Sequence record: MK250028.1 | Direction: 5' to 3' (one strand) | Length of the DNA: 64,000 bases | Shown here: positions 2,833-61,921 of the stretch, one piece after another | Position numbering within the stretch: position 1 is the stretch's first letter | Layout: the number at the start of each line of letters is the position of its first letter | Program-made: the position numbers and the translations under genes | Notes under the pieces: model-generated | What the model was told of the DNA's origin: nothing | Database searches by the model: none | Seen by the model: the letters and a program-made list of their open reading frames with translations, nothing else

Positions 2833-4071
2833 TTACTTATCCATTTTTGACCAATATAAATCTTCATCAACTAAATCAATAAGTCCCGACTAATATACTT
2901 TCCAATCGGTTTTTGAATATACATGGTCTTTTACTTTATCATCGTCGTAATCTAATTTATATTGTATTATAATAAAATTACCTTTTTCATCTTTTCCTTT
3001 CTCTATAACTTTATTACTTGTCATATAATTTGATGAATAGTCAGATAAAGACTTTGCATTTAATTTATTATTTTCTTGTAAATGTGAAATTACTTTATTT
3101 ACAATAATATTTATAATTTCATGCATATCTTTTTTATTACTAAACTTATAATTAGGTATATTATAGTCTATTAAGAATTGTTTAAATAAATCCTCACCAT
3201 ATTTAAAACCATTATACTCCGATGGATTCATAATAAGTGGTTGCTGTTCCATTTTGAATAATTTAAATCCTAATTTTTTAAGATATAACAAAAATAGTTC
3301 AAATGTTTTTAAATTTTCACAAATTAAAGAATATCCAAGTATTACATTTTTACATAATTTTGTCAACTTAATAGGATTTTCATTATTATTTGTAACAAAT
3401 ATATTAATTTTACTATATAAATTTATATATTCTTCTTTAATAGGAATAACTTTATTTGGATCAATAACTTCTTTTCTAGTATCTCCAATAATTATATTTT
3501 TTGTTTTATGATATATATCATCTTCTGCGTTCAATATAATATTTTTTATTTTATACCCATTTTCTATATATGTGTTTATAAGATAAAACATTTGTAAAAA
3601 TAATTCATTACCTATATAATCATATGGTATAAACTCCATATTATAATGTGGTTGTCCCATATTAAATATAATATCTGTTATCACTTTATCATTAACATGT
3701 AATATACAATTTAAATCATATTTGTTTGTTCTACCAAATCCATAAATTTCAATTGTATCAATATCAATTGAATTATCATAGTCTTTAAACTTACAATTAA
3801 TCTGAAATTTTTTTACATTATTAAAATATCTTATATAATACTTATTTTTACATGCTTCATTAATATATATTAATCCTATATTGTAAAGATTTTCAGCCCT
3901 ATCAAAATTCACAAAACTATCAGGATATTCAGTGATATTATATGGTAGCTTTTTAAGCTATCTTATTTCATTATTATATAATTCCTATGATACTGTACGT
4001 TCTGGTGTATCTACAATATCGTCTATATCATCAAAAAGGGACTCAACTAATTTCTTTATTAATTTATTCAT
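2833..4071 (-). CDS. Hypothetical protein with N-terminal LVESLFDD motif (412 aa)
   Basis: ORF 2890..3912 extended through TAG at both ends; starts MNKLIKKLVESLFDDIDD at ATG 4071, TAA at 2833. Confidence 0.8.
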
Positions 4072-10000: not shown

Positions 10001-10268
10001 CCATTATACCTTTACGTAATTTCTTTTCTGTATTATCATTAATAGATGTAATAGTTAATTTATTATAATACTTATTTTCTGTTGTAAATTTATATCCAGT
10101 AATCCAATCAGGTTTATATATACATTCAATAGTAGATGTAATAGGTATATAGTTTTTTTCCAATACTGCATAATATTCCGTATCAGTACTGGTAAACTTA
10201 TTTGCTGGTAATATAGGTAATGTAATTGTGTCTGATAATAATTTATTAAATTTATAATCGTTCATCAT
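4068..10268 (-). CDS. Giant hypothetical protein (2066 aa), likely structural (fibre/adhesin-like)
   Basis: Seven track ORFs lie in the same frame. Codon-by-codon reading found about 35 TAG and no TAA/TGA between ATG 10268 and TGA 4068, which overlaps the next ATG (ATGA). Rich in N, Y, I and T. Confidence 0.85.
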
Positions 10269-10290: not shown

Positions 10291-12009
10291 TTAAAGAAAT
10301 CCATGGAATATAAAATCTCCAAAGATTGATCTTGTAGTTGGTGCCCATGTAGTTAAAATGGCGGCAATAAACCATATATTTGTTAATTTAAGTCTTTCAT
10401 ATGTCGGTAAGAAATCACCACCTATAACTATTGTTCCTTCTAGTAATCTTACAAGTTTCTCAATAGCTGGAGCATTCTGATCACTTAATGCTAATCTGAC
10501 ATCAAACAATTCAGGATCCATTAAATATTCTGGTGCAGTAATAGGCGGAAATGCTTTACGAACAATAGTGTTTATTTTCTAAAAATCTACATTCTATAAT
10601 GCTGACTTCATGCCAATATCCAATTTAAATTGGCACTTACTCATATCAAATGCTATATTCATAACTCCCATTCCCCAAAATGGTTTTCCTAACTATCCTG
10701 CTTTATATACAGTTGGATCAGTTTTATAAAATGGGCATACAGCCATATTAGATTTTAATGTAAAGAAAAAACCATATTCCTATGGACCAATATAGAATAA
10801 TCCACTTACTTTATTAATAGTGTTATAAGCTGCTGCCAATGCATTTTCCAATGCTTCTTTAGCTAATTGTACAGCTTTAATAACCTAATTGATAACGGCG
10901 AATAAGGGTGATAATTTCGCGTCTATCGTGCCGAATTTAATACGCCTTAGTAATTTTATTATTAACTCATCTTTTTTGATTAGAAGCAAATTTATAATCT
11001 TTTTTAACTCAAGAAATACTATGTTAACTTTCGCAGTTACATAATTTCTGTACTCTTCTGGCATAGATGCTGTTCCTGCTAAAATATCAGGAACTTTAGA
11101 AACAACATTCAATACAAGATTAAAGTAATCAAGAATATTTTTTATTCTTTCTATAATCTCTGGAGTTTCAACAGTATATTCACCTTTTAATGTTTCCGAT
11201 ATTTTCCTAAGTAAATCTTTCGCGGCACATGTAAGCGAACAATATCCATTACTAGGCATAAAATCTATATGCTTTCCACATACCGGGCATGTACCACCTT
11301 TCATTAAATAATGTCCGAACTAATCTATTCCAGAAGCTAATCCAATTGCTGCTTCCAATGTACTCTTTTTCTTTTTATTTCCATCGTCATCTATGGAAAT
11401 TTCATCATTAACAGCCTTAATTGTATCATCATCCTCAGCGTTCTATACAGAAGAACTCGCTAATGTGGTAGTATCTTCTAATGCAACTGTATCTTTTATT
11501 TTACCATTTAAATCTGTATCATCTCCCTAATGATACTCATCATTAGAAATTTTTACGCCAAATGTATCTTCTTCTATAATATTAGATTCATCAAATATAG
11601 AAGCACCTGTATATTCTTCAAGGTCTTCATCTGTTTGCTCTGTATGCCCTGTTGTATTTACAAATTCTTCCGATGAATTATCATTTTGATCTTCTAACTG
11701 TTTCTATGTAAAAGAATTTACATATTTTTCCAATTCATCAAATGATAAATTTCTCTTAACTTCATCCGTTGTTTTATTTGTAACATTATATGATAAATCA
11801 ACCTATATTTTTGTATTTGTTAAATTTCCGTTCTAATCAACTTCATAATAATCATGCCAAGAAACAAATATTTCATTTCTAGGTTCACCGACATAATATG
11901 TTTTATATCTTAAATTCTATCTATAATATTTTTTGTTTGACTCAATCTAAACATCATCGTCATCATACTCATAATATATAGTTCCTGATTTTGATGTAAT
12001 CGTATTCAT
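10291..12009 (-). CDS. Hypothetical protein with acidic N-half and CPVC..C..C zinc-binding motif (572 aa)
   Basis: ORFs 10885..11304 and 10291..10521 are in frame; open from ATG 12009 to TAA 10291 with TAG read-through. Confidence 0.8.
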
Positions 12010-12011
12010 TT

Positions 12012-12725
12012 TCAAATAATTAAGTTTTCAATATTTCCTAAATATTCAACATCATTTAAGTTAAATCTCTACTTTATGTTGTTATCAAACTTAACAATAC
12101 ATGTATTCATTTTTTCTTGTATAGAATGTAATGTACCAAATTTATCTTTAGATATAATATAAACTTTATTTTCCTATAATTTATTTTGTTTAAATTTATT
12201 ATAGTTTTCCTATGTTAATGGATATTTGGTTTTCTTATTCTACTTATTAGCGATAATTTTACCAAATACTCTTGGTACACCATCGAATGTTTTAATATTG
12301 TTAAAGTTAGCATAGAGATTTCCATGTATAATATATGGGAATGCAGTCCAATCAGGTAAGTTATTTCCTGTATAGTTACAAGAGCCATCTACCTCATCGA
12401 ATTTAAATAACTGCATTCCCATTCTATTTAATCCTTTATTAGAAAGGTATAAATTATCATGGACATCCACCAAAATACCATGACCTGTACATTTAATCTC
12501 ATAGTTCTCTACATCAAGTTCATCTAAAATTCGTTCGACTCTTGGTTTTATTTCTGTTTCTTCATATTCTGATGATATGTTGTCTGACAGTGTTGTATCA
12601 CTATCAAGCCCTAAAAAATCATCATCTTCATCATCAAAATCATCAAACAGAGATTCATTCAACTTTGAGATTTTTGTGTTGTTATATTTTCTTATTTTCT
12701 TATATTCTGGAACTGAAATAATCAT
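12012..12725 (-). CDS. LRR-like repeat protein with LNESLFDD N-terminal motif (237 aa)
   Basis: Repeats such as GNNLPDWTAFPYIIHGNLYANFNNIKTFDGVPRVFG; extends through TAG to TGA 12012. Confidence 0.7.
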
Positions 12726-12765
12726 AATTAAAAAATAAATAATATTTTATATTATTTATTTTTGT

Positions 12766-13218
12766 TCATTTATCATCATTCATTATTAGAGTTGTTTTCC
12801 CTCTATCATCTTTTTTAATTCCCTAACATTCAATTATCTTATTCTTATAAAAACGTTCATAAAAAAATACTTCTTCACACAAATCGTACAAGTCTGTATG
12901 TTTTGGCAATATTCCATTATCCAAAAGTACAATCTTGCTAATTTCCTTAATCTATTTAAATTTAGACGAGATATTAAACAATAAATTTTCATCTAAATTT
13001 TTATTAATATAAATAATCCCCTGATATTTCTTTAATTTAGAAGCTTGCTAAATAGCGTTTAGAATTTCTGTATTAACGAAATATATATTTGACTATTTGT
13101 TTAGATCCAGTTTAAAACTATTTACGAACGACTATACATCAAGAATAAAAAAACTTTTAATGTTAGTGAATAACATTCTTAGTTTATTTTCAGATTCAGT
13201 TGTTACGTATATATTCAT
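12766..13218 (-). CDS. Hypothetical protein (150 aa)
   Basis: ATG 13218 to TGA 12766, interrupted only by TAG; absent from the ORF track. Confidence 0.75.
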
Positions 13219-13272: not shown

Positions 13273-14391
13273 TTATTCAGTACTTTGATTTTTATTATCT
13301 GACAATGAAGTCTCATAATAATCAGTTAAACCTTTTGCTAACGCTTCCTTTAACATATTATTATCAACTCTTCTTGATATACTGGTAACAAAATGTTCTG
13401 ACATTCCATCAGGATATACATCCTTTATAGTCTTGTAAACTTCCTTAGGTGGAAGTTCAAGTTCAACATCAACACCAATGGTATATACTTTCTTCTTACT
13501 CTTATCAATCATATTAGTGATAAGAATATCTTCTGTATAATTTGGATCTTCATAAGGCGAAACTTTCTTTTCAGTTTTTACTGTAACCTCATTATTTAAC
13601 CTTGAAATAAATTGTTCTATAGAAAGTTCTGTTGTCTTACCATTTGATATTACATTAATCTTATCATATTCAGAATTTGAATTAATATTATCGAGGTTAA
13701 TTGTAATGCTTGCGTGTCGTACTGTTTCTATAACAGATGTTGTTATAGGTGAGTCTGCCTGAATTTTTCCTGTAGTTATAACTTGTTTTTCAACTGGTGC
13801 TGTAATTTCATTAACAATTTCTTTTTTATTTGCTGTAATTGTTGGTTCTGTTTTCTTTACTACAGTACCAAATGTTACATTATCAGCAGATTTATTAACT
13901 GGTTTACCACCATTCAACAATTCAGGATGTAATGAAAGTAAATAATTTTCTTTATCTTCTACCTTCGGATTTTTCACAAAAGTAGGTGGAGTTGCATCTG
14001 TTCTTTTTCCTTCATTTCCTATTGTTCTTGATGTTGATTTGCCTTCGCTATTAATTCCAACACTTATATGTTCACCATTCATTCCAATACCAGGTTGAGG
14101 AACTTCATATGGATTACCATCTTTATCATAAACAGTTTTTGTCTCATTTAAATTAAACTCATATGTTTTAAAATCCCATTTATTAAGTGGAGATGATAAT
14201 TCAGACATAACAAATTGCCCATTAAACGCGTCCATATTATTGACTTCCGCAATATAAGATTCATCACATTTTGTTTGATCTTCAAATACATAAAGTGTTA
14301 ACTCATCATCAGATATATCGTCGATATATTTAAGTTTTGTAATTTTACCAAGTGTATCACCTGGTTGCATGTGCTAATAAAACTTTGCCAT
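13273..14391 (-). CDS. Hypothetical protein (372 aa)
   Basis: Track ORF extended upstream through one TAG to ATG 14391 (MAKFYQHMQPG). Confidence 0.8.
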
Positions 14392-16803: not shown

Positions 16804-19011
16804 TTAATTTCCACCGAATAACTTATCTAATTCTTCTTGTGACATTGCATCTACTGCATCATCACCATTTGTAGATGGTTCATCGTCTTTCTTATCATCT
16901 GATTTATCTTCATCAGAATCTGAATCACTATCATCTGAAGACTCATTATCATCTGTTGAATCGGAATCGTCATCAACAATTTGTCCACCAATCATATCTT
17001 CAAATTCTTCTTTAGTAATACCATATTCGTTATTCAAAACATCTGCAAGATCATTTACATAATCTGTATTTGTTAAAACAACTTTAACTGGTTTATCATC
17101 ACCATCTACATTATCATCTGTTGAATCATCTGCATTTGCATCATCAGAATCTGAATCACTGTCGTCTGAATCATCTGCATTTGCATCATCAGAAGAATCA
17201 TCATTATCATCTTCAAGTAATTTCTTGAACTTATTATAATGTAAAGACTCATTTGATGCATTATCATCTGTATCAGTTGAATCATCTGAATTTTCATCAT
17301 CAGAAGATATATCATCTGCATTGTCATCTGTTGACTCACTATCATCTTCAGAATCATCAGTTTCATCATCTTCATCTTCAAACTCAATAGCATCATCTGG
17401 AACACCAGCATCTACAAGAGATTGCTTAAGCTCATCTGCTGCTGCTTGATTTGCAACTGTAATTACAACACGTGATAACTCAACTTCTTCATCTGTATCT
17501 GGATTTTCATCTGTAGATGAATCATCAGCTTTATCCGTTGAACTATCATCTGCATTATCAGCATCATCACTTGCATCATCTGAACCTGTTGGATCTACTG
17601 GTAATGGTTCCAATGGATTATCTTGTGTTTCTTCATCCTCATTCAACTTAAGACCTTTAGCTTTAATTAATTTCTTATATGTTAAACGGTATGTAAGTTC
17701 TTCATCAAGAATATTCATTAACTTTTCTTTATTAAGAATTGAATCACGAAGTTCTCTCTTTGTTGATTTAGAAGCAGACTCATTCAAAGACTTATAAGAT
17801 TTCATAAGTTTTGTATGCTGTGCTTTAACGGTATTTAACAATTCAAGAAGTTCTTTTGCTGTATATTCTGTAATATTCTTACCATTAATAGTTTTCTTCT
17901 CATAAAGATTCTTCTTACCAGACTTCATTGCTTTACGAATGAACTCAAACTTCTCTGAACCAATTGATTCCTTTAATGCAAGAAGTTCTCTTCTTTTCTG
18001 TTGAAGTTTTGCGTTTTTATTAACAGGTTCACTCTTAGCTTTATTAATTGCACGATTAATAATAGATTCATTAAGTGTTGTTTTCTTTGCAGATTTTACA
18101 ATATCCTTTGTGGTAAGTCCATTCTTTCTCATCTTCAATGCTTCAGAAAGATTTACAAGACGTTTACCATTTCTTCTCTTTCCTGGACAACATCCTTTCT
18201 TTTTCTCAAGAAGCTTCTTTCTTTTTAAACGACGATCATTCTTTGATTCATAGCACTCAAACTCTTCATCTTCCATGCATTCATCAAATTCATCATCTGA
18301 ATCATTCAAAGAATCTTCATCTGCAAATTCTTCATCTGCATCTTCATATGTCTCATCATAAAGATCATCATCATCATCAAGTTCACCTTCTGCATCCATA
18401 TCTGCATATGCATCATCTCTTGCATCCAATGCATCTGGATCATTAGGATCTACCTCATCATAATCTGGAATCATATCATCATAATCATCTTCGTCATCAA
18501 GATAGTCATCATCAATAGACTCATCCATATCTACATAATCATCACCATATTCATCCTTCATATCATCAATAGCTGTATCTCTTGCATCATCATCTTCTGG
18601 AATATCAAGCCATTCACCTTCATCATCAAGGCCATAGTCTTCATCCATATCTTGATAATCATCGCCATACTCATCTTCCATATCTGCTTCAGCTGCAGCA
18701 CGTGCATCATCATCAGACTCTACATCGTCAAGTTCATCATCTGCGTCGTCATATGTAAAATAAGTATCAACATCATCAATATTATATTCGTCTTCAAAAA
18801 TATCAATAATATCATCTTGTGTAAGTCCGTCAATTACCATATATACGGTATCTCCATCCTCTTCCTTTGATACTGTAGCGTCTGCATTCGTATCTTCAAT
18901 ATGTGTAGCCAAATCATCCATATTACCTTGAAGTTCAGGATAATCATGAACAAGCTATACAACATCAATCTTTACAGGAAATGCATAACTTTCATTAAGT
19001 TTTCTTTTCAT
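16804..19011 (-). CDS. Very acidic protein with basic helical core (735 aa), possible prohead core/scaffold
   Basis: Starts MKRKLNESYAF (one TAG at codon 19). D/E-rich ends, K/R-rich middle, and repeated LNES/INES/LNED/LLED motifs. Confidence 0.55.
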
Positions 19012-19071: not shown

Positions 19072-19695
19072 TTAACTTAAATTAATTAATTTATTATAAT
19101 ATTCTTTCAATAATTGTTCACTTATTATATTATTACTCAACATATTGATATATGAAGTTTTAAATTCTTCATAATCTTTATGTTTTATATCATTTCTTAT
19201 CACAGTTGATGAAACACATTCATTATTATATTCATCATCTCTATTTATATAATGAATTGGTTCTATATTTGCATTTATATATATAGTTTTAATACCTATA
19301 TCTTTATTATAATATTTGCCATTAATTGAATAAAGATTACAAAATTCTTCTTTACGTTTTATATCTGTTCCTTTATCTGATGTAACTAAACAGAATTTAT
19401 CATTGTTCAAAGAATTTCCAACATCATTATAACATTTTCTAATAGGTGCAGGATATTCAGATATATTCACTTTTATTTCTGTATTATATAAATCTGATAA
19501 TTTATCTTTTATACTATTTAAAAACCAAAGACTAGAATCTGCTGTTATTGAATCTCTATCTTTATATGAAATATAAATACGTGCTTCATCAATATGAACA
19601 TTATCTGTATTAAAGATATGTGACCTTAATATAGATAAATGTCCATCATGAAATGGTTTAAAACCACCCGGAAATAATAATATATTTTTACTCAT
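19072..19695 (-). CDS. Cytidylyltransferase-like (HxGH) nucleotidyltransferase
   Basis: ILLFPGGFKPFHDGHL motif near the N-terminus; late VSSTVIR motif. Confidence 0.8.
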   Translation of the reverse strand: MSKNILLFPGGFKPFHDGHLSILRSHIFNTDNVHIDEARIYISYKDRDSITADSSLWFLNSIKDKLSDLYNTEIKVNISEYPAPIRKCYNDVGNSLNNDKFCLVTSDKGTDIKRKEEFCNLYSINGKYYNKDIGIKTIYINANIEPIHYINRDDEYNNECVSSTVIRNDIKHKDYEEFKTSYINMLSNNIISEQLLKEYYNKLINLS

Positions 19696-19707
19696 TCATT
19701 TAATTTT

Positions 19708-22272
19708 TTAAATACCACGTTTACCAAATTTAGAAGTATCAATACCAATTAAATTCTTTAATGATATACCTCCTAATTTCTGCATTTCTGCAAAAGTCTT
19801 TAATATAAACTTGACATTTTGATTAAATACAACAAAAACAACATCTTTTCTTATTTTTGATGGAATTAATTTAAGTTGTTCCCAACCTGTATCTTCACCA
19901 TCTGTAAATACAATTATTGTTGTATGTTTCTCTCCATTATCGTAATAATATGGTTTCTTAAGTTTTGTAACACTTATAGTATTACCAGGAATATCTGTAC
20001 CACCAGAACCACCACGATCTCCAAGAAGTTCAAGACGTTTCTTTATAGGTGTCTTAATATTCCACATTGCTACATTTTCAGGAAGAATACGGCCTGTTGT
20101 AAAATATGCTCTGGCAGAATTCAATACCTTACATGTTTTCTCCATTGTACAAATTTCCTTGAATATCTGATAGAATATTCCATTTCCATTACCATACATA
20201 GAACCTGAATTATCTATAAGATAAAATATATTAGCCGCATTGTTTTCTTCAAATGGAACTTTCTTATATGGATTGAATCTATCATCACGCCATGATTGTG
20301 ACATTGTTCTTTTCGAACGTTTCATTTGTGTTCCCGCTTCCATTGCAGCTGTGAAATGTTTTCTTAACTTTTGTTTCCAGTTAGCCAATGATTGCATATT
20401 CTTTAATTTATCTGCAATATCATTAAGTTTATTTGCTAAATCAGGAGAAATATTTCTTAACTGATCCATGTGTTCTTCATTATACTTTCTTGATAATTCT
20501 TTAGGATCACATGTTAATTCTTCAGCTGTATAAGGATCACCAGATTCTTTTGCAATTTCTGCCATTTGTTCTTGTGACAACATATCGGCGCCACCAAATG
20601 TAGAAGATGTAGTAGTATCAAATTCTTTACCTTCCAATTGTTTCTGAACTTCTTCCTCATTAGGTCCCGCTTGCATATCTCTATCGATTTTATTTTTCAT
20701 ATCATCAATAGCGTTCTTGACATCCTTACGCGCTTGTTCACGTGCAGCTTTTTCTTCTGCAGACATTTGTCCAGAATTTCTACCGGATTTTGAATTGCCA
20801 GTTGAACCTTGATCAGACATATCACCATTCATTGATGAACCATCATTATCAGACGAACTATTACCAGATTGAGAATTACCTCGTTCATTTCCTTGTTCTC
20901 CTGATTGATTTCCATTACCAGTTTGTGAATCATTTCCTGAATTATCTCCTTCTTGATCATCACCTGAACCATTACCATTCTGATTATCATCTGAATCTTC
21001 ATCACCACTACCAGAACCTTTACCCATTGCTTTATCTAATTCTTTCTTTACTTCATCATTATAAGCATCTTGATATTCACTAGATTTATTTGTATTATCA
21101 GGCATTTGATCCATACCATAATCAGACATTGTATCTGGATCAGCTGCACTTAAATCTGTATCATCATAATTTGATGAACCTCCTTGTTGACTACCGTCGC
21201 CAGATTGCTGTTGTCCAGATTGACCTGACTGATTTCCAGAATCACTTTGACTTCCAGACTGACTAGATTGTTCACTCTGACCTTGTTGTCCTGATTGTGA
21301 TTGACTTCCAGATTGTCCTTGTTGACCATCTTGCTGTCCGGATTGTCCACCTTGTCCTTGTTGCTGTTGTGAACTACCACTACCTTGACCTTGTTGTCCT
21401 TGCTGTTGTTGATTATTAACAGGATTTTGATTAATAGGTTGATTTGGTGTAGAAACCTTATTATAGAAATAAGCATCAAAAATTAATTGCCATGGTTCCA
21501 TTCGGAATCTATCATCAAATATACCCTCACATTCTGCAGTTGCACCTGCAAAATATTTAGGAATTTGTTTTTCAAGATCTCTATTAATCTCTGCATCCAT
21601 GGCAATATTTGCCAATTGATGATTCTTTCCTCCTTGTGTTTCTGTTTTTCTTTCAGCTTGTTCTCTATGTCTATATATTTGATGATATGCCTCATGACAA
21701 ATAACATATAATACTAAACGTGCCATAGTAATAATTCTATCATTAGACGACATGCGTTTACCTTGTGCAAGCATTTCCTTTACTTGTCCTTTTCCTTTAT
21801 ATAAAAGTTGTTCAGCAAATATAGGATTAAACGCAATACGTACACCATCACTTGCCGCAGTATCAATATTAAATGTCCATAAAATAGGTTTATTAAATCG
21901 TCCAAGAATTGGTCCTAATTCCCTTGTACTTGCAGCTTGCGTCTTTGCCATTTCGCAAAATTGAGCAATCTCTGCAGGAACTATTTCCTCTTCTGTTTGA
22001 ACACCGGTTATTGCATCAGTTATCTTCACTTTTACAGGAACACGCATTTTAGCAACAGGTATTGCCATACCCATATCTGCCATTGTTTTCCCTTTATATA
22101 ACTTTCGTATATCAATACTCTTCTTTTTCATGAGTCTTCCCCATAATCCTTGAAGTTCTCGTTGTTTTTCTTCAGCAGTCTTCAACTTAATACCCATTGT
22201 TTGTTTAACAGTATTATTTGAATATGCTTCATATACTCGAGTTTTATTAGTTTTTAACTTTACTTTTACCAT
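19708..22272 (-). CDS. Putative metallopeptidase (DUF2201-like) + Q/G/S-rich linker + vWA domain protein (854 aa)
   Basis: TAASDG..IAFNP, HEAYH (HExxH), NIAMDAEIN; C-terminal MIDAS IDNSGS..GGT..FTDG. Confidence 0.85.
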   Translation of the reverse strand: MVKVKLKTNKTRVYEAYSNNTVKQTMGIKLKTAEEKQRELQGLWGRLMKKKSIDIRKLYKGKTMADMGMAIPVAKMRVPVKVKITDAITGVQTEEEIVPAEIAQFCEMAKTQAASTRELGPILGRFNKPILWTFNIDTAASDGVRIAFNPIFAEQLLYKGKGQVKEMLAQGKRMSSNDRIITMARLVLYVICHEAYHQIYRHREQAERKTETQGGKNHQLANIAMDAEINRDLEKQIPKYFAGATAECEGIFDDRFRMEPWQLIFDAYFYNKVSTPNQPINQNPVNNQQQQGQQGQGSGSSQQQQGQGGQSGQQDGQQGQSGSQSQSGQQGQSEQSSQSGSQSDSGNQSGQSGQQQSGDGSQQGGSSNYDDTDLSAADPDTMSDYGMDQMPDNTNKSSEYQDAYNDEVKKELDKAMGKGSGSGDEDSDDNQNGNGSGDDQEGDNSGNDSQTGNGNQSGEQGNERGNSQSGNSSSDNDGSSMNGDMSDQGSTGNSKSGRNSGQMSAEEKAAREQARKDVKNAIDDMKNKIDRDMQAGPNEEEVQKQLEGKEFDTTTSSTFGGADMLSQEQMAEIAKESGDPYTAEELTCDPKELSRKYNEEHMDQLRNISPDLANKLNDIADKLKNMQSLANWKQKLRKHFTAAMEAGTQMKRSKRTMSQSWRDDRFNPYKKVPFEENNAANIFYLIDNSGSMYGNGNGIFYQIFKEICTMEKTCKVLNSARAYFTTGRILPENVAMWNIKTPIKKRLELLGDRGGSGGTDIPGNTISVTKLKKPYYYDNGEKHTTIIVFTDGEDTGWEQLKLIPSKIRKDVVFVVFNQNVKFILKTFAEMQKLGGISLKNLIGIDTSKFGKRGI

Positions 22273-22382
22273 ATTAAAATACGTTAAAAATTCTTTTTAT
22301 TATTTATTGTAAAAAGAAAAGAGTGAATATAATTCTAATAAATTATACTCACTCTCTTTATATATTGTTTATTTATCTAACA

Positions 22383-25175
22383 TTATTTCTTTGCTCGTGA
22401 TTTAGCGTTTGAACGAGTCTTATTAAATTCATAAGATTCAGATCTTGCCAAAATATTCATCGCAGGTAAAATTGGAACTTTAGATTCTTCTACTTGATTT
22501 TCATGTGCAATAGATTTAAGATCAGAAGATTTCTATTGTCTAGCATTCTCTAACGCAATTTTTGTCTTTCTAATAGCTACTGTATTAATGAATTCCTTAC
22601 GAAGATCTGTATCAATATTATTAATACTATCAAACAATGTTGTATTCATATTATGAGCGATACTACCAATTTCCGTTTGAATACTAATCTTAGCAATCCA
22701 TGATGCAAAATGTGCATAAAGTTGAGCAACACGAGAATTAACCAATGAATTAACCTTATTACGTAATGTATCCATATCTGCTAATTCATTCTCATCAAAT
22801 AACAAATTAATAGATTTACCATTAATATTAAATGAATATTCCTTGATAAGATTCTGTGCTTCAGCAGCAACATCAGAATCTGACATTGGTTTTGCTTTCT
22901 TTAATGCTTTCAAATCTGCTGCAACATCATCTTCAAGATTACCTGGATAAGATGCGAATACTTGCATTGGTAATTCCTTTGCAATACTAGAAATACACTT
23001 CCACTTAGAATATTCCGAAGTTGCATATTGATCAACAGATAATGGTTTTCTATCATCATCATCTTGATATTCCTTAGGCATACTACCAGTTTCCCAAATA
23101 GTATTCATAACATCTGGTGTAAATACCTTAGCATATTCATTATATGTTTTCCATGCACTCATAACAGGACCGGTTGCTGTAGCACCATTTGTACCTGTAT
23201 CATCACCAACCATATCTCTCATGTTATCAGTGAAATAATTCATGAAGATATTATAACGTCCACGAATACCTGTTGCAGTTCCAGCAGGATCTAAGTCATC
23301 AATACCACCATGTTCTTCTACCCAATAATCCCAATAATCATCATCAAGACCATTCAATGCATCTTGAAGAACATTAGGAAGAATACCACCATAATATTCC
23401 TTGTATGTATTACCTTCATCATCAGTCTTTTCTTCTACAGATTGATCAATTAATTTCTGATAATATTCTTTACCTGAAATACCATCAGGATTTTCATCAA
23501 ATAATTCAATTAATTCATTCTTATAGAATGGACCTACTGTATTAGCCCATGTACGAGGAGTAACCATTCTCTTAGTACGAAGAATAACTTCCTAATTAAG
23601 AACATCCTGAATAGATGATAAAGAATCTTTATCATTTTCATGTGCTCTCTTATCTGCCTCTGGATTCTCAAGCATATCATCATAACCACCGTTTGCAATA
23701 GTAGAATACCATACATAATCAGGAGATGCTTCAATGAAGTCTACAATAAATGGAGGTACATTTGCCTCATGTGTCAATGGATCAACTGAACGTGCCCAAG
23801 TAATCCATTCGTCCTTAGAAGGAACATATGTATAATGGATAAAACGGTTTGTCTGCGCAGCAGTTGGGAAATATCTCTTATCTTCTGAATCTGCTTCACC
23901 TTCATCAATAGATCTATTAGAAGCAAGAACAAATCCCCATTTAGATGCAACAACATAATTATCACCAAACTTATGATCATTTACGATACCCATGATAATA
24001 TTCTGAACATTAGGTTCAACACGTGAATATTCATCCATAAATACAACACCACCTTCAAATGGATGTCCGTTAGATGCAGTGATTTCACCATCATCATCAG
24101 TTGCAAGGAACTTACATGTATTACAGAAATAATCGCGACGTTTCTTTTCCTCTGGATCAGAAGTATTAAGATATACTGGAAGCCAGTTCTTAGGAGTATC
24201 AGTAAATCCTTCTCTCTTATATTTCTTAGGAACACTTGTTCTATCTCTCTTCTAACCAAGTTCTACACCATAATCAATTTCACGTGTAGAGTCACGAGGT
24301 AATGTCCAGTTTTCAATAGTATAGCCAGCAAGCATAATAACTTCAAGATTCAAGTTAATTGCCTTATATTTAGCATTAGCCATATCTTTGATAGTTTGCT
24401 TAATAATTGCAGTTTTACCAATACCTGGAGCACCCCAAATAAGGAATGGTACAACATCTGAGTGTCCGCCAAGAGGCCCAGAAATTTGATTCTTAATATT
24501 AGTCTTAAGCTTGGCGATTAATTGTTTTGAATTAACAGCGACGCCGAAATGACTAAACCCTTTACTGTCCTTTACTGCATCATATGAATAAACTGCTTCA
24601 TTCAAAGCCTTATGTAATTTAGATTCTTTATAATATGTTTCATTTACATACTTAATAGATTCTGTGATAGTCTCATCTGTTGTACCAGCACGCTTAATAA
24701 CACGACTCCAATAATTAACAATATTTTTCTTATCATTAGCAATACCTTCTGCGAATGCTTGATCAATAGATAACCCACCAACTCCAGCGGTAGATTTAAG
24801 AGAAGCAGATGGCGCGAAATAAACACCTTTAGGTAATTGATGTTTCTATGCCATGATAGCAAGATTACCGACATTATTAAGAGACCAATTAATAACAGCA
24901 TCTGTTGTCTCATCAATAAGTGCAATAAATCCCTTTACTTTATCTGTAATATATGAAGCTACTTTCTTTCCGTATTCCTTAATCTTATCTAAGAAACCTT
25001 CATTAATTAAAATCTTATTTAATGGAATATTGTTCTCTGTGTAATTATCATCAAAACGCATTGAACAAGTATCGTTAGACTCGTTAATCGATAAAAGAAT
25101 ACCGTTAATCTTATACTATGTACCATTTACACAATGTACAAGAGTAGCAGGTATATTTAACTTAGTTTTTACCAT
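22383..25175 (-). CDS. MoxR/CbbQ-type AAA+ ATPase (930 aa)
   Basis: Four track ORFs joined through 5 TAG. Walker A WGAPGIGKT, Walker B VFMDEYSR, sensor-like LASNR, NRF and TPRTW. Confidence 0.85.
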
Positions 25176-25261
25176 ATTTTGAAAATCAAAAAATTATTTT
25201 TTATATTTATTATAAAAAATGGATAGTATTTTGTAATATCCATTTAATATTATTAATATAA

Positions 25262-25807
25262 TTATTTCTTATTCTTAAAAATATCTATATCATTATCAAT
25301 TCCTGTTTCCATAACAGCTTTTGATTTACTTGATGAAACTACAGTATATTCAATATCCGATGTATTACTGATAAACCATCTACCAGGATAACGTGCACAC
25401 AAATCTTTATGTTCTCTTACAATATCAAGCATTCGTTCCTGACTCTTCTGAAACTCACTTCTCAATACTTCAACACTTTCCATAATATTCTTATAGAGAG
25501 ATGAATCAAATTGAGGATTTGCCTCGGTAATCCACTTCATAAGTGAGCCATCATTTGCATCATAACGTTCACTCATAATATGTGTATAAATACTATCAAA
25601 ACTCTCTGCATACTTATCACTAATTTGTGCTTGTTGAGAAATAGTTTTCCACATACGATCATGCATGCCTTCAATCTTACCTCTCTGTGCTTCAGCTTCA
25701 TTTCTCAATGAAATCTCCTGATTATTATAAGAGAAATACATTGATACTCCAGAAATTACAAAAATTCCAATAATAATTGAAACAATAATAATTGCAATCT
25801 TTTTCAT
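25262..25807 (-). CDS. LemA-like membrane-anchored protein
   Basis: N-terminal TM helix, then YN..ISLRN..EAQ; C-terminal YPGRWF. Confidence 0.55.
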   Translation of the reverse strand: MKKIAIIIVSIIIGIFVISGVSMYFSYNNQEISLRNEAEAQRGKIEGMHDRMWKTISQQAQISDKYAESFDSIYTHIMSERYDANDGSLMKWITEANPQFDSSLYKNIMESVEVLRSEFQKSQERMLDIVREHKDLCARYPGRWFISNTSDIEYTVVSSSKSKAVMETGIDNDIDIFKNKK

Positions 25808-26702: not shown

Positions 26703-27959
26703 TTATTCATAAGAATTTTCATAATCTTTTAATTTTTCTTTCGCATATTCTATAGTTATATGAAATTCTTTTTCATTAGACGCCGGTAAATTATACATTG
26801 CATCATCCATAAGATTCTCTACTATTCCTCTTAACCCCCTAGCGCCTAATTTATTCTTAATGGATAACTTAACTATATAATCATAAACTTCATCATCTAT
26901 TATAAGTTCAATACCATCTAATTTAAACAACTTCTTAAATTGTTTAATAATAGCATTTTTCGGTTCTGTAAGAATTCTCTTCAAATCATCTTCAGTTAAA
27001 GGATTAAGATATGTAATAATAGGAAGTCTACCAATTAATTCAGGAATCAAACCATAATTCTTTAAATCTTCCGCATTTACATATTTAAATATGTTTTCTT
27101 TATTATCAGAAAAATATTTCTTATCCTTTGATACAAATCCTAATGTAGATTTATTAACTCGTCTCTCTATAATTTTATTCAAACCAACAAAAGCACCACC
27201 ACAAATAAATAAAATATTTTTTGTATCAACCTCTACCATTTTAGCATCCGGGTGTTTTCTTCCTCCCTTTGGAGGAACATTTACAACAGAACCTTCAATT
27301 ATTTTAAGTAATGCTTGTTGAACGCCTTCACCTGAAACATCTCTTGTTATAGATGGATTTCCTCCGGATTTCCTTGCAATCTTATCAATCTCATCAAGAA
27401 ATACTATTCCGTGTTCTGCTTTCTTAACATCATAATCACATGCTTGGAGAAGTCTTGTGATTGCAGTCTCAACATCATCACCAACGTATCCTGCTTCGGT
27501 GATAGAATTAGAATCCACTATACTAATTGGTACATCTAACATTTTAGCAATAGACTTAACCAAAAGTGTTTTACCAGTACCAGTGTCTCCCAAAAGTATA
27601 CAGTTACTCTTCTCAATCTCTACATCATCAAATCCTTTTTGTTTAATTCTCTTATAATGATTATAAACTGCAACTGCTAACCTTTGTTTCGCTTTATCCT
27701 GACCAATTACATATTGATCCAAAAATTCTTTAATCTCTGTAGGTTTTTTTACATCATCCTTATGAAAATTATCATCTGGTGGTAAAAACTGTGTATTATG
27801 ATTTACTATACTCAAATTCATATTGTAAATCTGGTCACAACATTCATTACAAATACTTCCATATTCACCATTAAAAAGTAATGCAACTTGGTCTTTCGTC
27901 TTACCACAAAATGAACACTTATTTTCTTTTTTATTTGTATCTTTCTTTTTTTCTGCCAT
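26703..27959 (-). CDS. clpX: ATP-dependent Clp protease ATP-binding subunit ClpX
   Basis: CSFCGK..C..C zinc domain, [18 protein letters not shown]...[17 protein letters not shown] docking loop, GARGL. Confidence 0.97.
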
Positions 27960-28678: not shown

Positions 28679-29812
28679 TTAATAATTTATTTGTTTTAAT
28701 CCTTCTGCTAAAATATTTAATGAAGCATTATAATCTCTATCAATCTCTTTACCACAATGTGGACATATCCATTCTCTCTAACTTAATTTTAAATCTTTAT
28801 AAATATGTCTACAATTATGGCAAGTTTTAGATGAAGGATAGAATCTATTTATTATAACCAGCTATTTTCCATACCATCTACATTTATATTCTAACTATTT
28901 TCTAAATTCAAATAAAGATAACTCTTGAATAGATTTAGCAAGTTTATGATTAGACATCATTCCATTTACATTTAAATCTTCAATACAGATAACTTGATTT
29001 TCATTAACTAGTTTTGAAGTGATTTGATGTAAATATGTATTTCTCTAATTTTTTATTTTCTCATGAACTTTTGCAATTTTAATTCTAACTTTATTCCGAT
29101 TATTACTTCCTTTCTATTTCTTACTTAACAACCTCTATAATTTCTTTAATTTCTTTTCTTGATTTCTATAGAAATGTTTATTTTCATATCTATTTCCATT
29201 AGAATCAACGATAAAATCTTTTATTCCTAAATCTAAACCTATTACGGTATCTAATTTTTCTTTTTGTATAATATTATAATATATTAAAATAAACAAATAA
29301 TATTTTTCTGTAGAAGTTTTAATAAGCGTAATTGAATGTATTTTATTTTGATTATGATTTAAATATATTTCATCTTTTTTAGAACATTTAAATAATATAT
29401 TCTTTAACTATTTAATTAATGTTATCCTATTACCATTAATTTTCTTCTTTTTAAATTTAAATATAGTTCTTGTAAATCTACAACTTTGCTTAATATCTTT
29501 CTTTGATTTGAATTTAGGATAACCATTATGTAATTTAAAGAAATTATCATATGCTTTAATTAAATCCTACATTGATTGCTATAAACACATAGCATATACA
29601 TCATTTAAAAAAGTATATTCATCTTGTTTTTTTAAATTAGTCAAATATTTACCTAATTGTGTCCATGATACAACTTGTTTATTCTACTCATACTATGACT
29701 TCTTATAATCCAATAATTTATTATATATAAGTCTACAACAACCTAACTGTTTAGAAATAAATTCTTTCTAAACATTATCAGGATATATTCGTATTTTAAT
29801 ATATTTTAACAT
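28679..29812 (-). mobile_element. tnpB: IS200/IS605-family TnpB RNA-guided nuclease (377 aa), no transposase
   Basis: KIRIYP..G..R..YN helix, YPKFKSK, RuvC GLDLG / IEDL / RDYNAS, zinc finger SSKTCHNC..WICPHCG; 12 in-frame TAG. Confidence 0.93.
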
Positions 29813-30702: not shown

Positions 30703-30993
30703 NNNNNNNNNNNNNNNNNNNNNNNNNNNNNNNNNNNNNNNNNNNNNNNNNNNNNNNNNNNNNNNNNNNNNNNNNNNNNNNNNNNNNNNNNNNNNNNNNN
30801 NNNNNNNNNNNNNNNNNNNNNNNNNNNNNNNNNNNNNNNNNNNNNNNNNNNNNNNNNNNNNNNNNNNNNNNNNNNNNNNNNNNNNNNNNNNNNNNNNNNN
30901 NNNNNNNNNNNNNNNNNNNNNNNNNNNNNNNNNNNNNNNNNNNNNNNNNNNNNNNNNNNNNNNNNNNNNNNNNNNNNNNNNNNNNNNNNNNNN
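30703..30993. other. Assembly gap (291 N)
   Basis: Run of N. Confidence 1.
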
Positions 30994-34174: not shown

Positions 34175-35293
34175 ATGACAACAACAAAGAAAACAATATA
34201 GATAAAGGCAAATAAATGTTTATTCTTAGCAGATATTCACTTAGGTGTTAGATCTGCATCAGAAGAATGGCAAGAAAATATATCATCTTATTTTTATAAT
34301 TGGTTTATTCCTTATGTTAAATCATTAATAGCAAATGACCCTAATTATTTTTTAGCAGTATTGGGAGATGTTTATGATGATAGAAAATCTATCGATATTA
34401 ATGTAAATGATTTAACTATTGATATATTTGAAGATTTAGGTAAATTATTACCTGTTTATATTATCAATGGAAATCATGATTTATCTAAGAGAACGAATAA
34501 AGGTAATACATCATTAAGAAGTTTGGAAAATATTCCTAATGTTACAGTTATAAAAGAGCCGACACTTATTAAGATTAAACCATCAACTAAAATATTATCA
34601 AATATCATTGCGATACCTTATTTAGGTTCACATGAAGAAGAAAACAAAGTATTGCTAGATTATTCAGGAAAAGCTAATTACGCATGGATGCATACTGATA
34701 TTTCACAAATGAAATTTGATAATGGCATGACAATTATAGGTGCAGTTGATTCAAATATATTTAAAGGACGAATCTTTTCAGGACATATACATAAACGTCA
34801 AGAATTAGGAAATGTTATTTATGTAGGCTCGCCTTATCAATTAAGAAGATCAGATATAGGAAATACTAAAGGAATTTATAAATTAGATTTTTCCAATAAT
34901 GAATTATCATTTGAAGAAAATGCTTATAGTCCAATATTTCATAAAATAAAAGTTGAAGATTTTTTAAAGTTATCAGTAAAAGAAAGAGATGAATTTCTTG
35001 ATAATAATTATAATGATATTATTATAGAAGAATCAGATTTAAGAAAATATAAGTCAGGAACTATTTATGACATGGCAAATCTCTCTAATGCAAAGAGAGT
35101 TCAGATTATAGTTAATAAGTCACATCATGATTTAGATAATATAGATGATGAAGAATATAAAGAGTTGTCTATTGAAGAACTTATAAATGAATCAATATCA
35201 CAATTGGATGTTGATGATGATACTAAAGAAAGATTGAAGAATATAAGTAGAGAAAGACTTAAACAAGCAGAAAATGAGATGAATGAAGTTTAA
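34175..35293 (+). CDS. Recombination endonuclease subunit, T4 gp47/SbcD/Mre11-like
   Basis: LADIHLG, LGDVYD, GNHD, MHTD, SGHIH, YVGSPYQ; one TAG at codon 9. Confidence 0.92.
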
Positions 35294-35382
35294 CATAATA
35301 AATAAATTAATTATTATAAAGGATATAGCATTTATTTGTTATATCCTTTAATTATAATTAAAAAAGTTAAACAAATAATTAT

Positions 35383-35580
35383 ATGGATAATATAATATTC
35401 ATAGTAGTATATGTTTTAATAGGATTAATAACATATGGATATTTTTTATATATAACAAAAGATAATGAAAATATAGATAGAAAATATAAGATAAAAATGT
35501 TTATTATTTCATTAATTGCGAGTCCATTGATGATCCTGTTTGAATTATTTCTTTTACTATTAAATAGATATGATTACTAA
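35383..35580 (+). CDS. Small membrane protein
   Basis: Two hydrophobic segments. Confidence 0.6.
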   Translation: MDNIIFIVVYVLIGLITYGYFLYITKDNENIDRKYKIKMFIISLIASPLMILFELFLLLLNRYDY

Positions 35581-35583
35581 AAT

Positions 35584-61053: not shown

Positions 61054-61144
61054 ACACAGATGTGCGAGTGGTTGATGCAGTTGGTCTCCAAAACCAATAA
61101 CGGTATATATGTACTGTTCGAGGGTTCGAATCCTTCTCTGTGTG
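61054..61144 (+). tRNA. Type II (Ser-like, long variable arm) tRNA with anticodon CCA (Trp)
   Basis: 7-bp acceptor ACACAGA/TCTGTGT, TGC/GCA D-stem, TTGGT-CTCCAAA-ACCAA, 7-8-bp variable stem, TTCGAAT T-loop, G73. Confidence 0.85.
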
Positions 61145-61411: not shown

Positions 61412-61436
61412 CTAAAAAATAAATTAAATTAGAAAA

Positions 61437-61685: not shown

Positions 61686-61737
61686 AAATATTTTTGATTT
61701 TTTATCAGACAAATTTTTTTATTTGAAATATATTATG

Positions 61738-61897: not shown

Positions 61898-61921
61898 TTT
61901 TGATAGACAAATATAGAAATT

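What the first reader, a model, noticed from the sequence alone, without database searches (positions are those of the whole stretch)
19072..25175. MoxR AAA + metallopeptidase-vWA + nucleotidyltransferase cluster with hallmarks of virion packaging
SEEN: consecutive same-strand genes encode a 930-aa AAA with a 190-aa N-terminal extension full of xxE sites, an 854-aa HExxH peptidase with a 250-aa Q/G/S/N/D linker and MIDAS vWA, and an HxGH nucleotidyltransferase. Both large proteins start MVK(T/V)KL. KNOWN: MoxR ATPases work with vWA partners as chaperones or remodellers, and the DUF2201-vWA/AAA pair is widespread with little known function. INFERENCE: a packaged and injected remodelling/proteolysis machine acting on a host target at the start of infection, or a head-assembly chaperone. 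The transferase may modify the same target.
Basis: partly seen in the sequence, partly recalled or inferred. Interest (0 to 1): 0.68.

Follow-up and report, generated by a model that had tools for sequence, protein, structure and literature searches.

The report
Enlarged phage AAA–protease/vWA chaperone pair
A Lak megaphage carries an oversized version of an ATPase plus tethered zinc-protease/vWA gene pair that many phages share; the genes are real and travel together, but the claimed signs that the proteins are packed into the virus particle do not hold up.

Summary
The window is Prevotella phage Lak-B1-like DNA, in which TAG encodes Gln. The three genes exist as described. They are a 930-aa AAA+ ATPase (five in-frame TAGs), an 854-aa HExxH peptidase–Gln/Gly linker–MIDAS vWA protein, and a 207-aa HxGH nucleotidyltransferase.

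The two large proteins are distant, enlarged members of the phage N4 gp24/gp25 pair (PHROG 1297/1314). A 2021 survey already described this MoxR-vWA-metallopeptidase pair in jumbo phages. Of 80 viral loci with an AAA relative, 76 have the peptidase and/or vWA gene within 9 kb, and 73 have it on the same strand (median gap 24 nt).

The packaging "hallmarks" fail:
- The AAA N-terminus is a conserved folded domain, not a propeptide.
- Glu is not enriched there.
- MVKxKL is at chance level and is not conserved outside Lak.

The transferase is linked only in a few lineages.

The most likely function is an ATP-driven, MIDAS-tethered chaperone/protease acting late in the infected cell, possibly in virion assembly. 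Packaging of the ATPase remains possible, because the phAPEC6 homologue was found in virions. Injection is unsupported.

Newly seen here: two extra AAA domains, a conserved acidic neighbour and a third linked domain.

The parts
22383..25175 (-). AAA+ ATPase gene, 930 aa when TAG is read as Gln (TAG codons at residues 20, 110, 308, 528, 881; stop TAA). It is the long form of the N4 gp24 / PHROG 1297 family.
   Evidence: phrog_1297 8e-21; 658 relatives.
25005..25154 (-). N-terminal beta-barrel of the AAA protein (aa 8-57), followed by a helical region to about aa 181. It is conserved in all long-form relatives.
   Evidence: invariant G25, E32, E59, D63; pLDDT 80-86; barrel profile hits only long-form AAA proteins, plus a weak hit in g237.
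23586..24542 (-). AAA+ core (aa ~212-530) with Walker A G248-T255, Walker B D381-E382, N420/R421 and R444.
   Evidence: dynein AAA Z 13.1, NorQ 12.1, CbbQ 12.0, Rea1/Mdn1 11.8-11.5; AAA_5 22.2 bits.
22596..23558 (-). C-terminal helical domain of the AAA protein (aa ~540-860). It is confidently modelled, conserved in long-form relatives and absent from N4 gp24.
   Evidence: pLDDT ~85-95; W543, W615, W725, K726 conserved. Its fold was not tested alone.
22317..22358 (-). Terminator-like hairpin (19-pair stem, then a T run) in the 110-nt gap between the AAA and peptidase-vWA genes.
   Evidence: A second hairpin plus T run lies upstream of the AAA gene (about 25215-25240).
19708..22272 (-). Metallopeptidase-linker-vWA gene, 854 aa. 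It has no TAG among 75 Gln codons. It belongs to the N4 gp25 / PHROG 1314 family.
   Evidence: (phrog_1314 5e-11).
21433..21999 (-). Zincin-like peptidase domain (aa ~92-280) with HEAYH at 193-197 (nt 21682-21696), H202 and the N222-A-x-D226-x-E228-x-N230 motif, all invariant.
   Evidence: DUF2201_N 17.5 bits; pLDDT 65-82; ZMPSTE24 Z 6.1.
20593..21432 (-). Disordered Gln/Gly/Ser/Asn/Asp-rich linker (aa ~281-560). A Gly/Gln-rich linker is a feature of the whole family; here it is longer.
   Evidence: all 21 aligned relatives have a GQ-rich linker; pLDDT ~30.
19723..20355 (-). vWA domain (aa ~640-850) with a complete MIDAS (D687-x-S689-x-S691 at nt 20200-20214, T759, D791).
   Evidence: profile against PDB vWA domains, E 1e-5; Z 8.4-7, including the NorD VWA domain at 7.2.
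19072..19695 (-). HxGH nucleotidyltransferase, 207 aa (H16-D-G-H19; S162-S-T-V-I-R167), of a phage-only family. It starts 13 nt after the vWA gene. It is linked to the pair only in some lineages.
   Evidence: (weak NMNAT/PPAT matches).
16804..19011 (-). Acidic 735-aa protein with one TAG. It is the conserved next neighbour of the vWA gene in distant recoded huge phages. Candidate partner or substrate (inference).
   Evidence: 33% identity over 344 aa outside the acidic runs, E 1e-32.
12012..12725 (-). 237-aa protein whose domain lies directly upstream of the peptidase-vWA gene in about 12 of the other loci where it was found, and is fused inside that protein in L025/L026. Candidate third component (inference).
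   Evidence: No Pfam or PHROG match.

Best explanation
Shown:
- The locus encodes an enlarged version of the phage N4 gp24/gp25-type pair: a MoxR/dynein-clade AAA+ ATPase, and a partner that joins a zincin HExxH peptidase to a MIDAS vWA domain through a long flexible Gln/Gly linker.
- All catalytic and metal-binding motifs are intact, and the two genes are co-inherited across very distant phages.

Inferred, by analogy with the MoxR-vWA systems NorQ/NorD and CbbQ/CbbO:
- The ATPase forms a ring that docks the vWA domain.
- The MIDAS metal grips an acidic side chain of a client protein.
- ATP hydrolysis remodels the client while the tethered peptidase cuts it.
- In effect this is an ATP-dependent protease/chaperone built in trans.

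Inferred from TAG use, and from the setting of the pair in phAPEC6:
- The client is most likely a phage protein complex made late in infection, plausibly a virion or assembly component.
- The work is done inside the infected cell, and the ATPase may be carried along into particles.
- In Lak the full-length ATPase needs TAG read as Gln, so the complete machine exists only once the recoded code is in use.

The nucleotidyltransferase is a lineage-limited neighbour with an unknown substrate and is not a core part. The conserved acidic neighbour is the best candidate client or partner.
For: Family identity:
- P0001 matches phrog_1297 (8e-21) and P0002 matches phrog_1314 (5e-11).
- N4 gp24 and gp25 are the archetypes of these two families (2e-136 and 1e-135).
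- Profiles built from the Lak family and its relatives hit N4 gp24/gp25 and phAPEC6 gp265c/gp264c at 1e-11 to 1e-30.

Fold:
- The AAA core ranks with dynein, NorQ, CbbQ and Rea1 (Z 13.1-11.5).
- The vWA domain scores Z 8.4-7, including the NorD VWA domain.

Motifs: all are invariant.

Co-conservation: 76 of 80 loci have the partner, 73 on the same strand, with a median gap of 24 nt. It lies upstream or downstream, fused or split.

Timing:
- In Lak the AAA gene has 5-9 TAG codons and the vWA gene none among 75 Gln codons.
- In L011, L013 and L014 the pattern is reversed: 0 against 12-33. At least one partner therefore needs recoding in each of the recoded lineages examined (Lak; L011, L013, L014).
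- TAG-using regions of Lak encode most structural proteins (PMC6784885).

Context elsewhere: in phAPEC6 the pair sits among virion genes and the ATPase was found in virions.

Precedent: a published proposal gives the jumbo-phage pair a virion-assembly chaperone/protease role, with a precedent in Acidianus two-tailed virus tail development (PMC7824862).
Against: - No experiment exists for any member of the phage family, so the client is unknown.
- The N4 homologues are middle genes next to DNA-metabolism genes, which fits a non-structural role.
- In Lak the cluster is about 90 kb from the prohead protease. Its near neighbours (ClpX, a membrane protein, TnpB) are not structural.
- Physical binding of the two proteins was not tested, because complex prediction did not complete.
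- That TAG use marks late expression in Lak is a hypothesis. No RNA run holds this locus.
- Three long-form AAA loci (L010, L015, L093) have no partner nearby.
Confidence: 0.5

Rival explanations
1. Both proteins are packed into the capsid through an N-terminal signal, trimmed by the prohead protease at xxE sites, and injected to remodel or cleave a host target at the start of infection.
For: - Lak encodes an S77 (T4 gp21-type) prohead protease.
- The phAPEC6 homologue of the ATPase was detected in virions with 6 peptides.
- The Staphylococcus phage DC4 homologue was detected with 1 peptide.
- ATV ORF618 is a structural MoxR-like protein and a weak structural match (rank 40).
- The first ~90 aa of the vWA protein are Lak-specific and poorly modelled, so a propeptide there is not excluded.
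Against: - The AAA N-terminus is a conserved folded barrel. The first [LIV]xE contains invariant E32, so cutting there would destroy the domain.
- Glu is not enriched there.
- MVKxKL is chance-level and not conserved.
- The vWA-peptidase partner is not among the phAPEC6 virion proteins I saw. Thymidylate synthase is in the same virion list, so carry-over of abundant proteins is possible.
- N4 gp24/gp25 are described as middle transcripts.
- A 930-aa hexameric ATPase is an unlikely cargo for passage through a tail (my own reasoning).
Confidence: 0.12
2. A non-structural, middle-phase role, as the N4 gene order suggests. The pair matures or remodels a replication or nucleotide-metabolism complex, or degrades host proteins during takeover, with no link to virions.
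For: - N4 gp24/gp25 lie between early/middle genes and the dCTP deaminase, rIIA/B, helicase and DNA polymerase genes, and are described as middle transcripts.
- In Delftia phage RG-2014 the homologues sit next to the dUTPase and thymidylate synthase genes.
- In Lak the vWA gene, the transferase and ClpX are TAG-free, like non-structural regions.
Against: - In every recoded lineage examined, one partner carries in-frame TAGs.
- The phAPEC6 pair lies inside a block of virion genes.
- The downstream conserved genes in the Lak-like block are TAG-rich, and one relative of them carries a cell-wall peptidase domain, which is typical of virion proteins.
Confidence: 0.22
3. A phage-borne conflict system related to the bacterial vWA-MoxR ternary systems, used against competing phages or host defences.
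For: vWA-MoxR modules are components of bacterial NTP-dependent conflict systems (PMC7159879, listed). Huge phages carry many conflict genes.
Against: - There are no PADLOC matches beyond generic AAA similarity.
- No effector or VMAP-type partner gene was seen.
- The pair is a core gene set of all N4-like phages, which is unlike variable defence cargo.
Confidence: 0.05

Closest known systems
Phage N4 gp24 (AAA ATPase) and gp25 (vWFA protein); PHROG 1297 / 1314. Core genes of N4-like phages, also present in rV5-like, Campylobacter, AR9/PBS1-like and Asteriusvirus jumbo phages.
   Same: - It is the same two families by profile.
- The genes are adjacent on one strand.
- It has HExxH plus MIDAS vWA in one protein, joined by a Gly/Gln-rich linker.
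- An intermediate relative links to 775 phage records.
   Different: - The Lak AAA is 930 aa against 352 aa. It adds an N-terminal beta-barrel plus helical region and a ~320-aa C-terminal helical domain.
- The partner is 854 aa against 380 aa, with a ~280-aa linker and a Lak-specific N-terminus.
- Pairwise BLAST similarity is barely detectable.
- It carries extra conserved neighbours.
MoxR-vWA chaperone pair with an N-terminal metallopeptidase, described in group 2.2 jumbo phages (Iyer et al. 2021, PMC7824862); for example phAPEC6 gp265c/gp264c.
   Same: The architecture and the proposed chaperone/co-chaperone logic are the same. phAPEC6 gp265c is annotated as a MoxR ATPase and gp264c as N4 gp25-like, and both match the profiles built here.
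   Different: That description did not cover Lak or the long-form ATPase. No function has been tested in either case.
NorQ/NorD and CbbQ/CbbO (bacterial MoxR AAA+ with a vWA partner that activates nitric oxide reductase or Rubisco).
   Same: The AAA fold is similar (NorQ Z 12.1, CbbQ Z 12.0), as is the vWA fold (NorD VWA Z 7.2). The MIDAS is intact.
   Different: The bacterial partners have no peptidase domain. Sequence similarity is only at the P-loop level. The clients are metabolic enzymes.
Acidianus two-tailed virus ORF618 (MoxR-like) and its vWA partner, reported to drive tail development outside the cell.
   Same: It is a viral MoxR-like ATPase plus a vWA protein that are virion components (as cited in PMC7824862). 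There is a weak structural match (E 2e-4).
   Different: It is an archaeal virus, it has no peptidase domain, and the relation is distant.
NMN / phosphopantetheine adenylyltransferases (HxGH nucleotidyltransferase superfamily).
   Same: It has the HxGH and SSTxxR motifs and weak matches to archaeal NMNAT and CoaD.
   Different: - All scores are below the family cut-offs.
- Its relatives are phage-only clusters.
- Lak-C1 has two better CTP_transf_like genes elsewhere, plus a NAPRTase-family gene.

Membership tests
N4 gp24/gp25-type phage pair (PHROG 1297 + 1314) | The ATPase matches the gp24 family profile. | tested here: met
   phrog_1297 scores 8e-21 for P0001. N4 gp24 scores 2e-136 against the same profile. 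The A1 profile hits gp24 at 3.5e-11 and phAPEC6 gp265c at 1.9e-17.
N4 gp24/gp25-type phage pair (PHROG 1297 + 1314) | The partner matches the gp25 family profile and carries both HExxH and a MIDAS vWA. | tested here: met
   phrog_1314 scores 5e-11. The peptidase and vWA profiles hit gp25 at 6e-19 and 5e-21. The motifs are invariant.
N4 gp24/gp25-type phage pair (PHROG 1297 + 1314) | The two genes are adjacent and co-oriented. | tested here: met
   The gap in the window is 110 nt. In 73 of 80 loci the genes are on the same strand, with a median gap of 24 nt.
N4 gp24/gp25-type phage pair (PHROG 1297 + 1314) | Usual size and domain content (about 350-520 aa ATPase; 380-650 aa partner). | tested here: not met
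   The proteins are 930 aa and 854 aa, with extra conserved N- and C-terminal domains in the ATPase. I therefore file it as a variant.
MoxR-type AAA+ (dynein/midasin/MoxR clade) with a vWA partner | Intact Walker A and B, sensor and arginine residues. | tested here: met
   G248-T255, D381-E382, N420, R421 and R444 are invariant in 36 sequences.
MoxR-type AAA+ (dynein/midasin/MoxR clade) with a vWA partner | Pfam AAA_5 or AAA_3 above the curated cut-off. | tested here: inconclusive
   AAA_5 scores 22.2 bits against a cut-off of 22, with no single stretch passing. AAA_3 is not matched.
MoxR-type AAA+ (dynein/midasin/MoxR clade) with a vWA partner | A fold closest to clade members. | tested here: met
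   Dynein AAA scores Z 13.1-12.7, NorQ 12.1, CbbQ 12.0 and Rea1/Mdn1 11.8-11.5. Other AAA+ clades follow only 1-2 Z units lower.
MoxR-type AAA+ (dynein/midasin/MoxR clade) with a vWA partner | Ring formation and physical binding of the vWA partner. | not testable with these tools
It then did not complete a request that used natural relatives.
Pfam DUF2201 (PF13203 peptidase + PF09967 VWA-like) | Both Pfam models above their cut-offs. | tested here: not met
   DUF2201_N scores 17.5 bits against 23.2, and PF09967 is not matched. One Lak variant has a precomputed PF13203 hit. Homology is seen only at profile level.
Capsid-targeted, protease-trimmed internal head proteins (T4 IP/Alt-like, phiKZ inner-body-like) | A shared N-terminal targeting sequence. 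| tested here: not met
   MVKxKL similarity is at chance level (P 0.07). It is not conserved in relatives of either protein.
Capsid-targeted, protease-trimmed internal head proteins (T4 IP/Alt-like, phiKZ inner-body-like) | A dispensable N-terminal propeptide with cleavage sites after Glu. | tested here: not met
   For the ATPase the N-terminus is a folded, conserved domain and Glu is not enriched. For the first ~90 aa of the vWA protein the test is inconclusive: the stretch has low pLDDT and is Lak-specific.
Capsid-targeted, protease-trimmed internal head proteins (T4 IP/Alt-like, phiKZ inner-body-like) | Presence in purified virions. | not testable with these tools
   There is no Lak proteome. 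Among homologues, the phAPEC6 ATPase was detected, and its partner is not in the part of the list I saw. In the part of the roseophage virion table I saw, no homologue of N4 gp24/gp25 is listed.
HxGH nucleotidyltransferase superfamily (NMNAT / PPAT type) | The HxGH and SxTxxR motifs. | tested here: met
   H16-D-G-H19 and S162-S-T-V-I-R167.
HxGH nucleotidyltransferase superfamily (NMNAT / PPAT type) | A family model above its cut-off, which would imply the substrate. | tested here: not met
   CTP_transf_like scores 17.5 against 21. The NMNAT subfamily model scores 22 against 127, and CoaD 19.9 against 103.

The most novel reading that the evidence does not exclude
In TAG-recoded huge phages the gp24/gp25-type pair may have grown into a multi-part machine. 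Its parts would be:
- a long-form ATPase with its own beta-barrel and a large helical domain;
- the peptidase-vWA, fused or split;
- a conserved acidic ~700-aa protein;
- a small domain that sits next to, or is fused into, the vWA protein.

Its activity would be gated by the genetic-code switch, because in each recoded lineage examined (Lak; L011, L013, L014) one partner, not always the same one, carries in-frame TAG codons. The acidic protein would be the MIDAS-bound client or a scaffold.
Probability: 0.15. Interest if true: 0.65.

Novelty: new variant of a known kind. Interest (0 to 1): 0.4.

Why it matters
The gp24/gp25-type pair is a core gene set of N4-like phages and occurs in hundreds of cultured phages. 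An intermediate relative links to 775 GenBank phage records. Yet no member has a tested function.

The Lak version shows how far the module can expand. It also points to testable partners: an acidic protein, and a small domain that is fused to the vWA protein in some phages.

For Lak biology it adds a second proteostasis machine beside the phage's own ClpX and ClpP. It also gives a concrete case in which stop-codon recoding could time the assembly of a two-part enzyme.

It does not give evidence for a new injected effector.

Tried and rejected
- **tblastn against GenBank phages.** P0001 and P0002 found only Lak records. An intermediate relative was needed to reach cultured phages.
- **The search for homologous proteins on the peptidase domain.** This returned only Lak variants more than 90% identical, which was no use for diversity.
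- **Profile searches against PDB sequences.** These gave only P-loop-level matches for the ATPase and nothing for the 372-aa neighbour.
- **Domain-swap idea.** I tested whether the ATPase's N-terminal barrel is the same domain as the SH3-like insert seen in the linkers of some vWA partners. The barrel profile hit none of them, so I dropped the idea.
- **TAG-free vWA gene as a conserved design.** Rejected, because in L011, L013 and L014 the pattern is reversed.
- **Defence-system reading.** There were no PADLOC matches.
- **Sigma-70 promoter scan.** It gave no more sites than shuffled sequence (66 against 65.4).
- **Expression.** No RNA run holds the locus.
- **Phage G.** The paper's text does not mention gp566, and no supplements are held.
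- **Complex prediction.**
I did not resend that sequence.
  - A request with the natural relative P0004 (58% identical) in its place, together with P0002, did not complete. The machine was busy on eleven tries.
  - No verdict exists on binding.


Full report
**What the window is**

The finding's 6.1 kb is 100% identical to Prevotella phage Lak-B1 (MK250020.1) and about 81% identical to Lak-A and Lak-C. The window is 21-36% G+C.

Under the bacterial code the claimed 930-aa gene is broken into pieces. All five in-frame stops are TAG, and the frame ends at TAA. Reading TAG as a residue doubles the summed length of long frames across the window. The original Lak paper established TAG=Gln, code 15 (PMC6784885). 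I therefore used TAG=Gln throughout. A run of N at 30703-30993 was left untouched.

**Checking the observation**

The three minus-strand genes are real:
- AAA+ ATPase, 22383-25175, 930 aa.
- Peptidase-linker-vWA, 19708-22272, 854 aa.
- Nucleotidyltransferase, 19072-19695, 207 aa.

The motifs hold:
- The ATPase has invariant Walker A and B, N420/R421 and R444 in an alignment of 36 relatives.
- The second protein has invariant HExxH (193-197), H202, an NxAxDxExN motif, and a full MIDAS (D687-x-S-x-S691, T759, D791).
- Its C-terminus models as a vWA fold (Z 8.4-7, all top hits vWA). A family profile matches solved vWA domains at E 1e-5.
- Residues 277-502 are disordered.
- The transferase has HDGH (16-19) and SSTVIR (162-167).

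Pfam support for the family names is marginal.

**The packaging 'hallmarks'**

These do not survive testing.

First, the 190-aa N-terminus of the ATPase is not an extension or a propeptide. Relatives only 30-38% identical align from residue ~3. They share a strongly conserved motif set. AlphaFold models residues 8-57 as a beta-barrel at pLDDT 80-86, followed by helices.

Second, Glu is not enriched there: 5.3% against 6.5% overall. There are no [SAG]xE sites. The six [LIV]xE sites (shuffle p 0.016) include invariant core residues.

Third, the shared MVK(T/V)KL is literal but ordinary in this Lys-rich proteome. Three of the gene pairs among 48 genes match at 4 or more of 5 positions after Met, against 0.9 expected (P 0.07). 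Outside Lak A/B/C neither protein family keeps the motif.

Terminator-like hairpins precede both large genes.

**What the pair is**

Both proteins fall, distantly, in PHROG 1297 and PHROG 1314. Phage N4 gp24 and gp25 are the archetypes of these two families. Profiles built here from the Lak family and its metagenomic relatives hit the following:
- N4 gp24 at 3.5e-11.
- N4 gp25 at 6e-19 (peptidase profile) and 5e-21 (vWA profile).
- phAPEC6 gp265c ('MoxR ATPase') at 1.9e-17.
- phAPEC6 gp264c ('N4 gp25-like') at 7e-30 (peptidase profile) and 4e-24 (vWA profile).

An intermediate relative reaches 775 GenBank phage records. These include N4-like, rV5-like, Campylobacter, AR9/PBS1-like and ~350-kb enterobacterial jumbo phages.

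The ATPase fold ranks with dynein AAA modules, NorQ, CbbQ and Rea1/Mdn1 (Z 13.1-11.5). Other AAA+ clades follow only slightly lower. Viral structure matches include PBS1, phage G gp566, RaK2 'Gp24-like' and, weakly, ATV ORF618.

The literature already holds the essentials:
- gp24 and gp25 are among 14 core genes of N4-like phages and are middle transcripts (PMC4193335).
[quoted passage not shown] They proposed a role in virion assembly with proteolytic processing (PMC7824862).

**Co-conservation**

A scan of IMG/VR with the ATPase alignment gave 80 loci. Iterated profile searches of their six-frame translations found a peptidase and/or vWA frame in 76 of them:
- 73 are on the same strand.
- 49 lie downstream and 23 upstream.
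- The median gap is 24 nt.

Of the four loci without a partner, two end at the contig edge. The partner is sometimes split into separate peptidase and vWA genes, and sometimes expanded to 1,300-1,600 aa. A Gly/Gln-rich linker is a feature of the whole family.

Three long-form loci (L010, L015, L093) truly lack a nearby partner.

The transferase accompanies the pair only in Lak, in L016-L019 and in L027. In the latter two groups it is part of a ~590-aa protein. It belongs to a phage-only family. Lak-C1 has two better-scoring transferases of this superfamily and a NAPRTase-family gene elsewhere. I do not count it as a core part.

**What is new in the Lak form**

- The ATPase has two extra conserved parts: the N-terminal barrel plus helical region, and a confidently modelled helical domain at about 540-860. 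Sixty-eight database representatives match at E 1e-30 or better.
- In distant recoded huge phages (L011, L013, L014; the ATPase is ~30% identical) the gene order is kept. It runs ATPase, peptidase, vWA, an acidic ~650-690-aa protein, then homologues of window genes 13273-14391, 12766-13218 and 10291-12015.
- The acidic protein's homology is real outside its acidic runs (33% over 344 aa).
- The domain of the 237-aa protein at 12012-12725 lies directly upstream of the peptidase-vWA gene in about 12 of the other loci where it was found. It is fused inside that protein in L025 and L026. It has no known family.

**Timing**

In Lak the vWA gene has 75 Gln codons and no TAG, whereas TAG supplies 28% of Gln-type codons in the window. 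The ATPase has 5 TAG codons in Lak-B and 9 in Lak-A and Lak-C. In L011, L013 and L014 this is reversed: the ATPase has 0 and the vWA protein 12-33. The specific pattern is therefore not conserved, but in each recoded lineage examined one partner needs TAG decoding.

Lak structural genes lie mostly in TAG-using regions. This fits a late-acting machine, but it is an inference. No RNA data hold the locus.

**Virion association**

Evidence is mixed.
- phAPEC6 gp265c was found in purified virions (6 peptides, 19% coverage). Its gene sits among virion genes. The gp25-like partner is not in the listed proteins I saw, and thymidylate synthase is in the same list.
- The Staphylococcus phage DC4 homologue gave a single peptide, and the authors themselves were cautious.
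- N4's pair is a middle-gene pair.
- Lak-C1 does encode an S77 prohead protease, about 90 kb from this cluster.

**Verdict**

The genes and their partnership are real, and the family is known but unstudied. The Lak form is an enlarged variant with new accessory domains and neighbours.

The best reading is an ATP-driven chaperone/protease with a MIDAS-tethered peptidase, working late inside the cell, plausibly on a virion or assembly component. Binding, client and timing are all inferred. The injected-machine reading lacks support.

Noticed in passing
window 26703-27959 (-); Lak-C1 126598-127140 and 163886-164296: The phage encodes a full-length ClpX (NCBIfam equivalog 562 bits against a cut-off of 359, with the zinc finger) three genes upstream of the ATPase. 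Lak-C1 also has two ClpP-family genes elsewhere. ClpX also lies near long-form ATPase genes in L015 and L093.
   Followed up: partly
window 28679-29812 (-): This is a TnpB / IS605 OrfB-type gene (PHROG 506, 4e-122) with 12 in-frame TAG codons, so it is adapted to the phage's code. It is present in the Lak-B-like loci but not in the Lak-A and Lak-C flanks that I fetched.
   Followed up: partly
window 16804-19011 (-): This 735-aa protein has very long Asp/Glu runs around a basic central stretch and small conserved domains. It is conserved right after the vWA gene in distant recoded phages. No family match was found.
   Followed up: partly
window 12012-12725 (-); L020-L053, L025/L026: The domain of this unannotated 237-aa protein recurs directly upstream of the peptidase-vWA gene in many phages, and is fused inside that protein in L025 and L026. 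The ATPase's barrel profile also gives a weak hit to its C-terminus (E 2e-4).
   Followed up: partly
whole window: Genes fall into two classes, TAG-free and TAG-rich (0% against 30-86% of Gln-type codons), and the classes are interleaved gene by gene rather than in large blocks. Examples: 19072-22272 and 25262-25807 are free, while 10291-13218 and 4068-10268 are rich.
   Followed up: partly
window 25262-25807 (-): This 181-aa protein has an N-terminal membrane helix. It matches PHROG 1383, 'virion structural protein' (3e-37), and resembles LemA-type proteins in layout. It is TAG-free and is followed by a hairpin plus T run.
   Followed up: no
L011 19225-20718: The relative of window gene 10291-12015 carries an N-terminal Peptidase_M15_3 cell-wall hydrolase domain (1.7e-17) that the Lak protein lacks. 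This hints that the gene encodes a virion or ejection protein.
   Followed up: no
window 48804-52565 (+), 34175-37260 (+), 61054-63875 (+): These regions hold a 1,253-aa tail sheath homologue with a long N-terminal addition, SbcD/SbcC-like genes, and a cluster of six tRNA genes. One tRNA is called with the unusual anticodon ATT.
   Followed up: no
Lak-C1 168319-169206, 444327-444722, 538219-538713: Here lie a NAPRTase-family gene and two further cytidylyltransferase-like genes. Together they suggest phage-encoded NAD or cofactor salvage that does not depend on the transferase in the finding.
   Followed up: no
   Followed up: no
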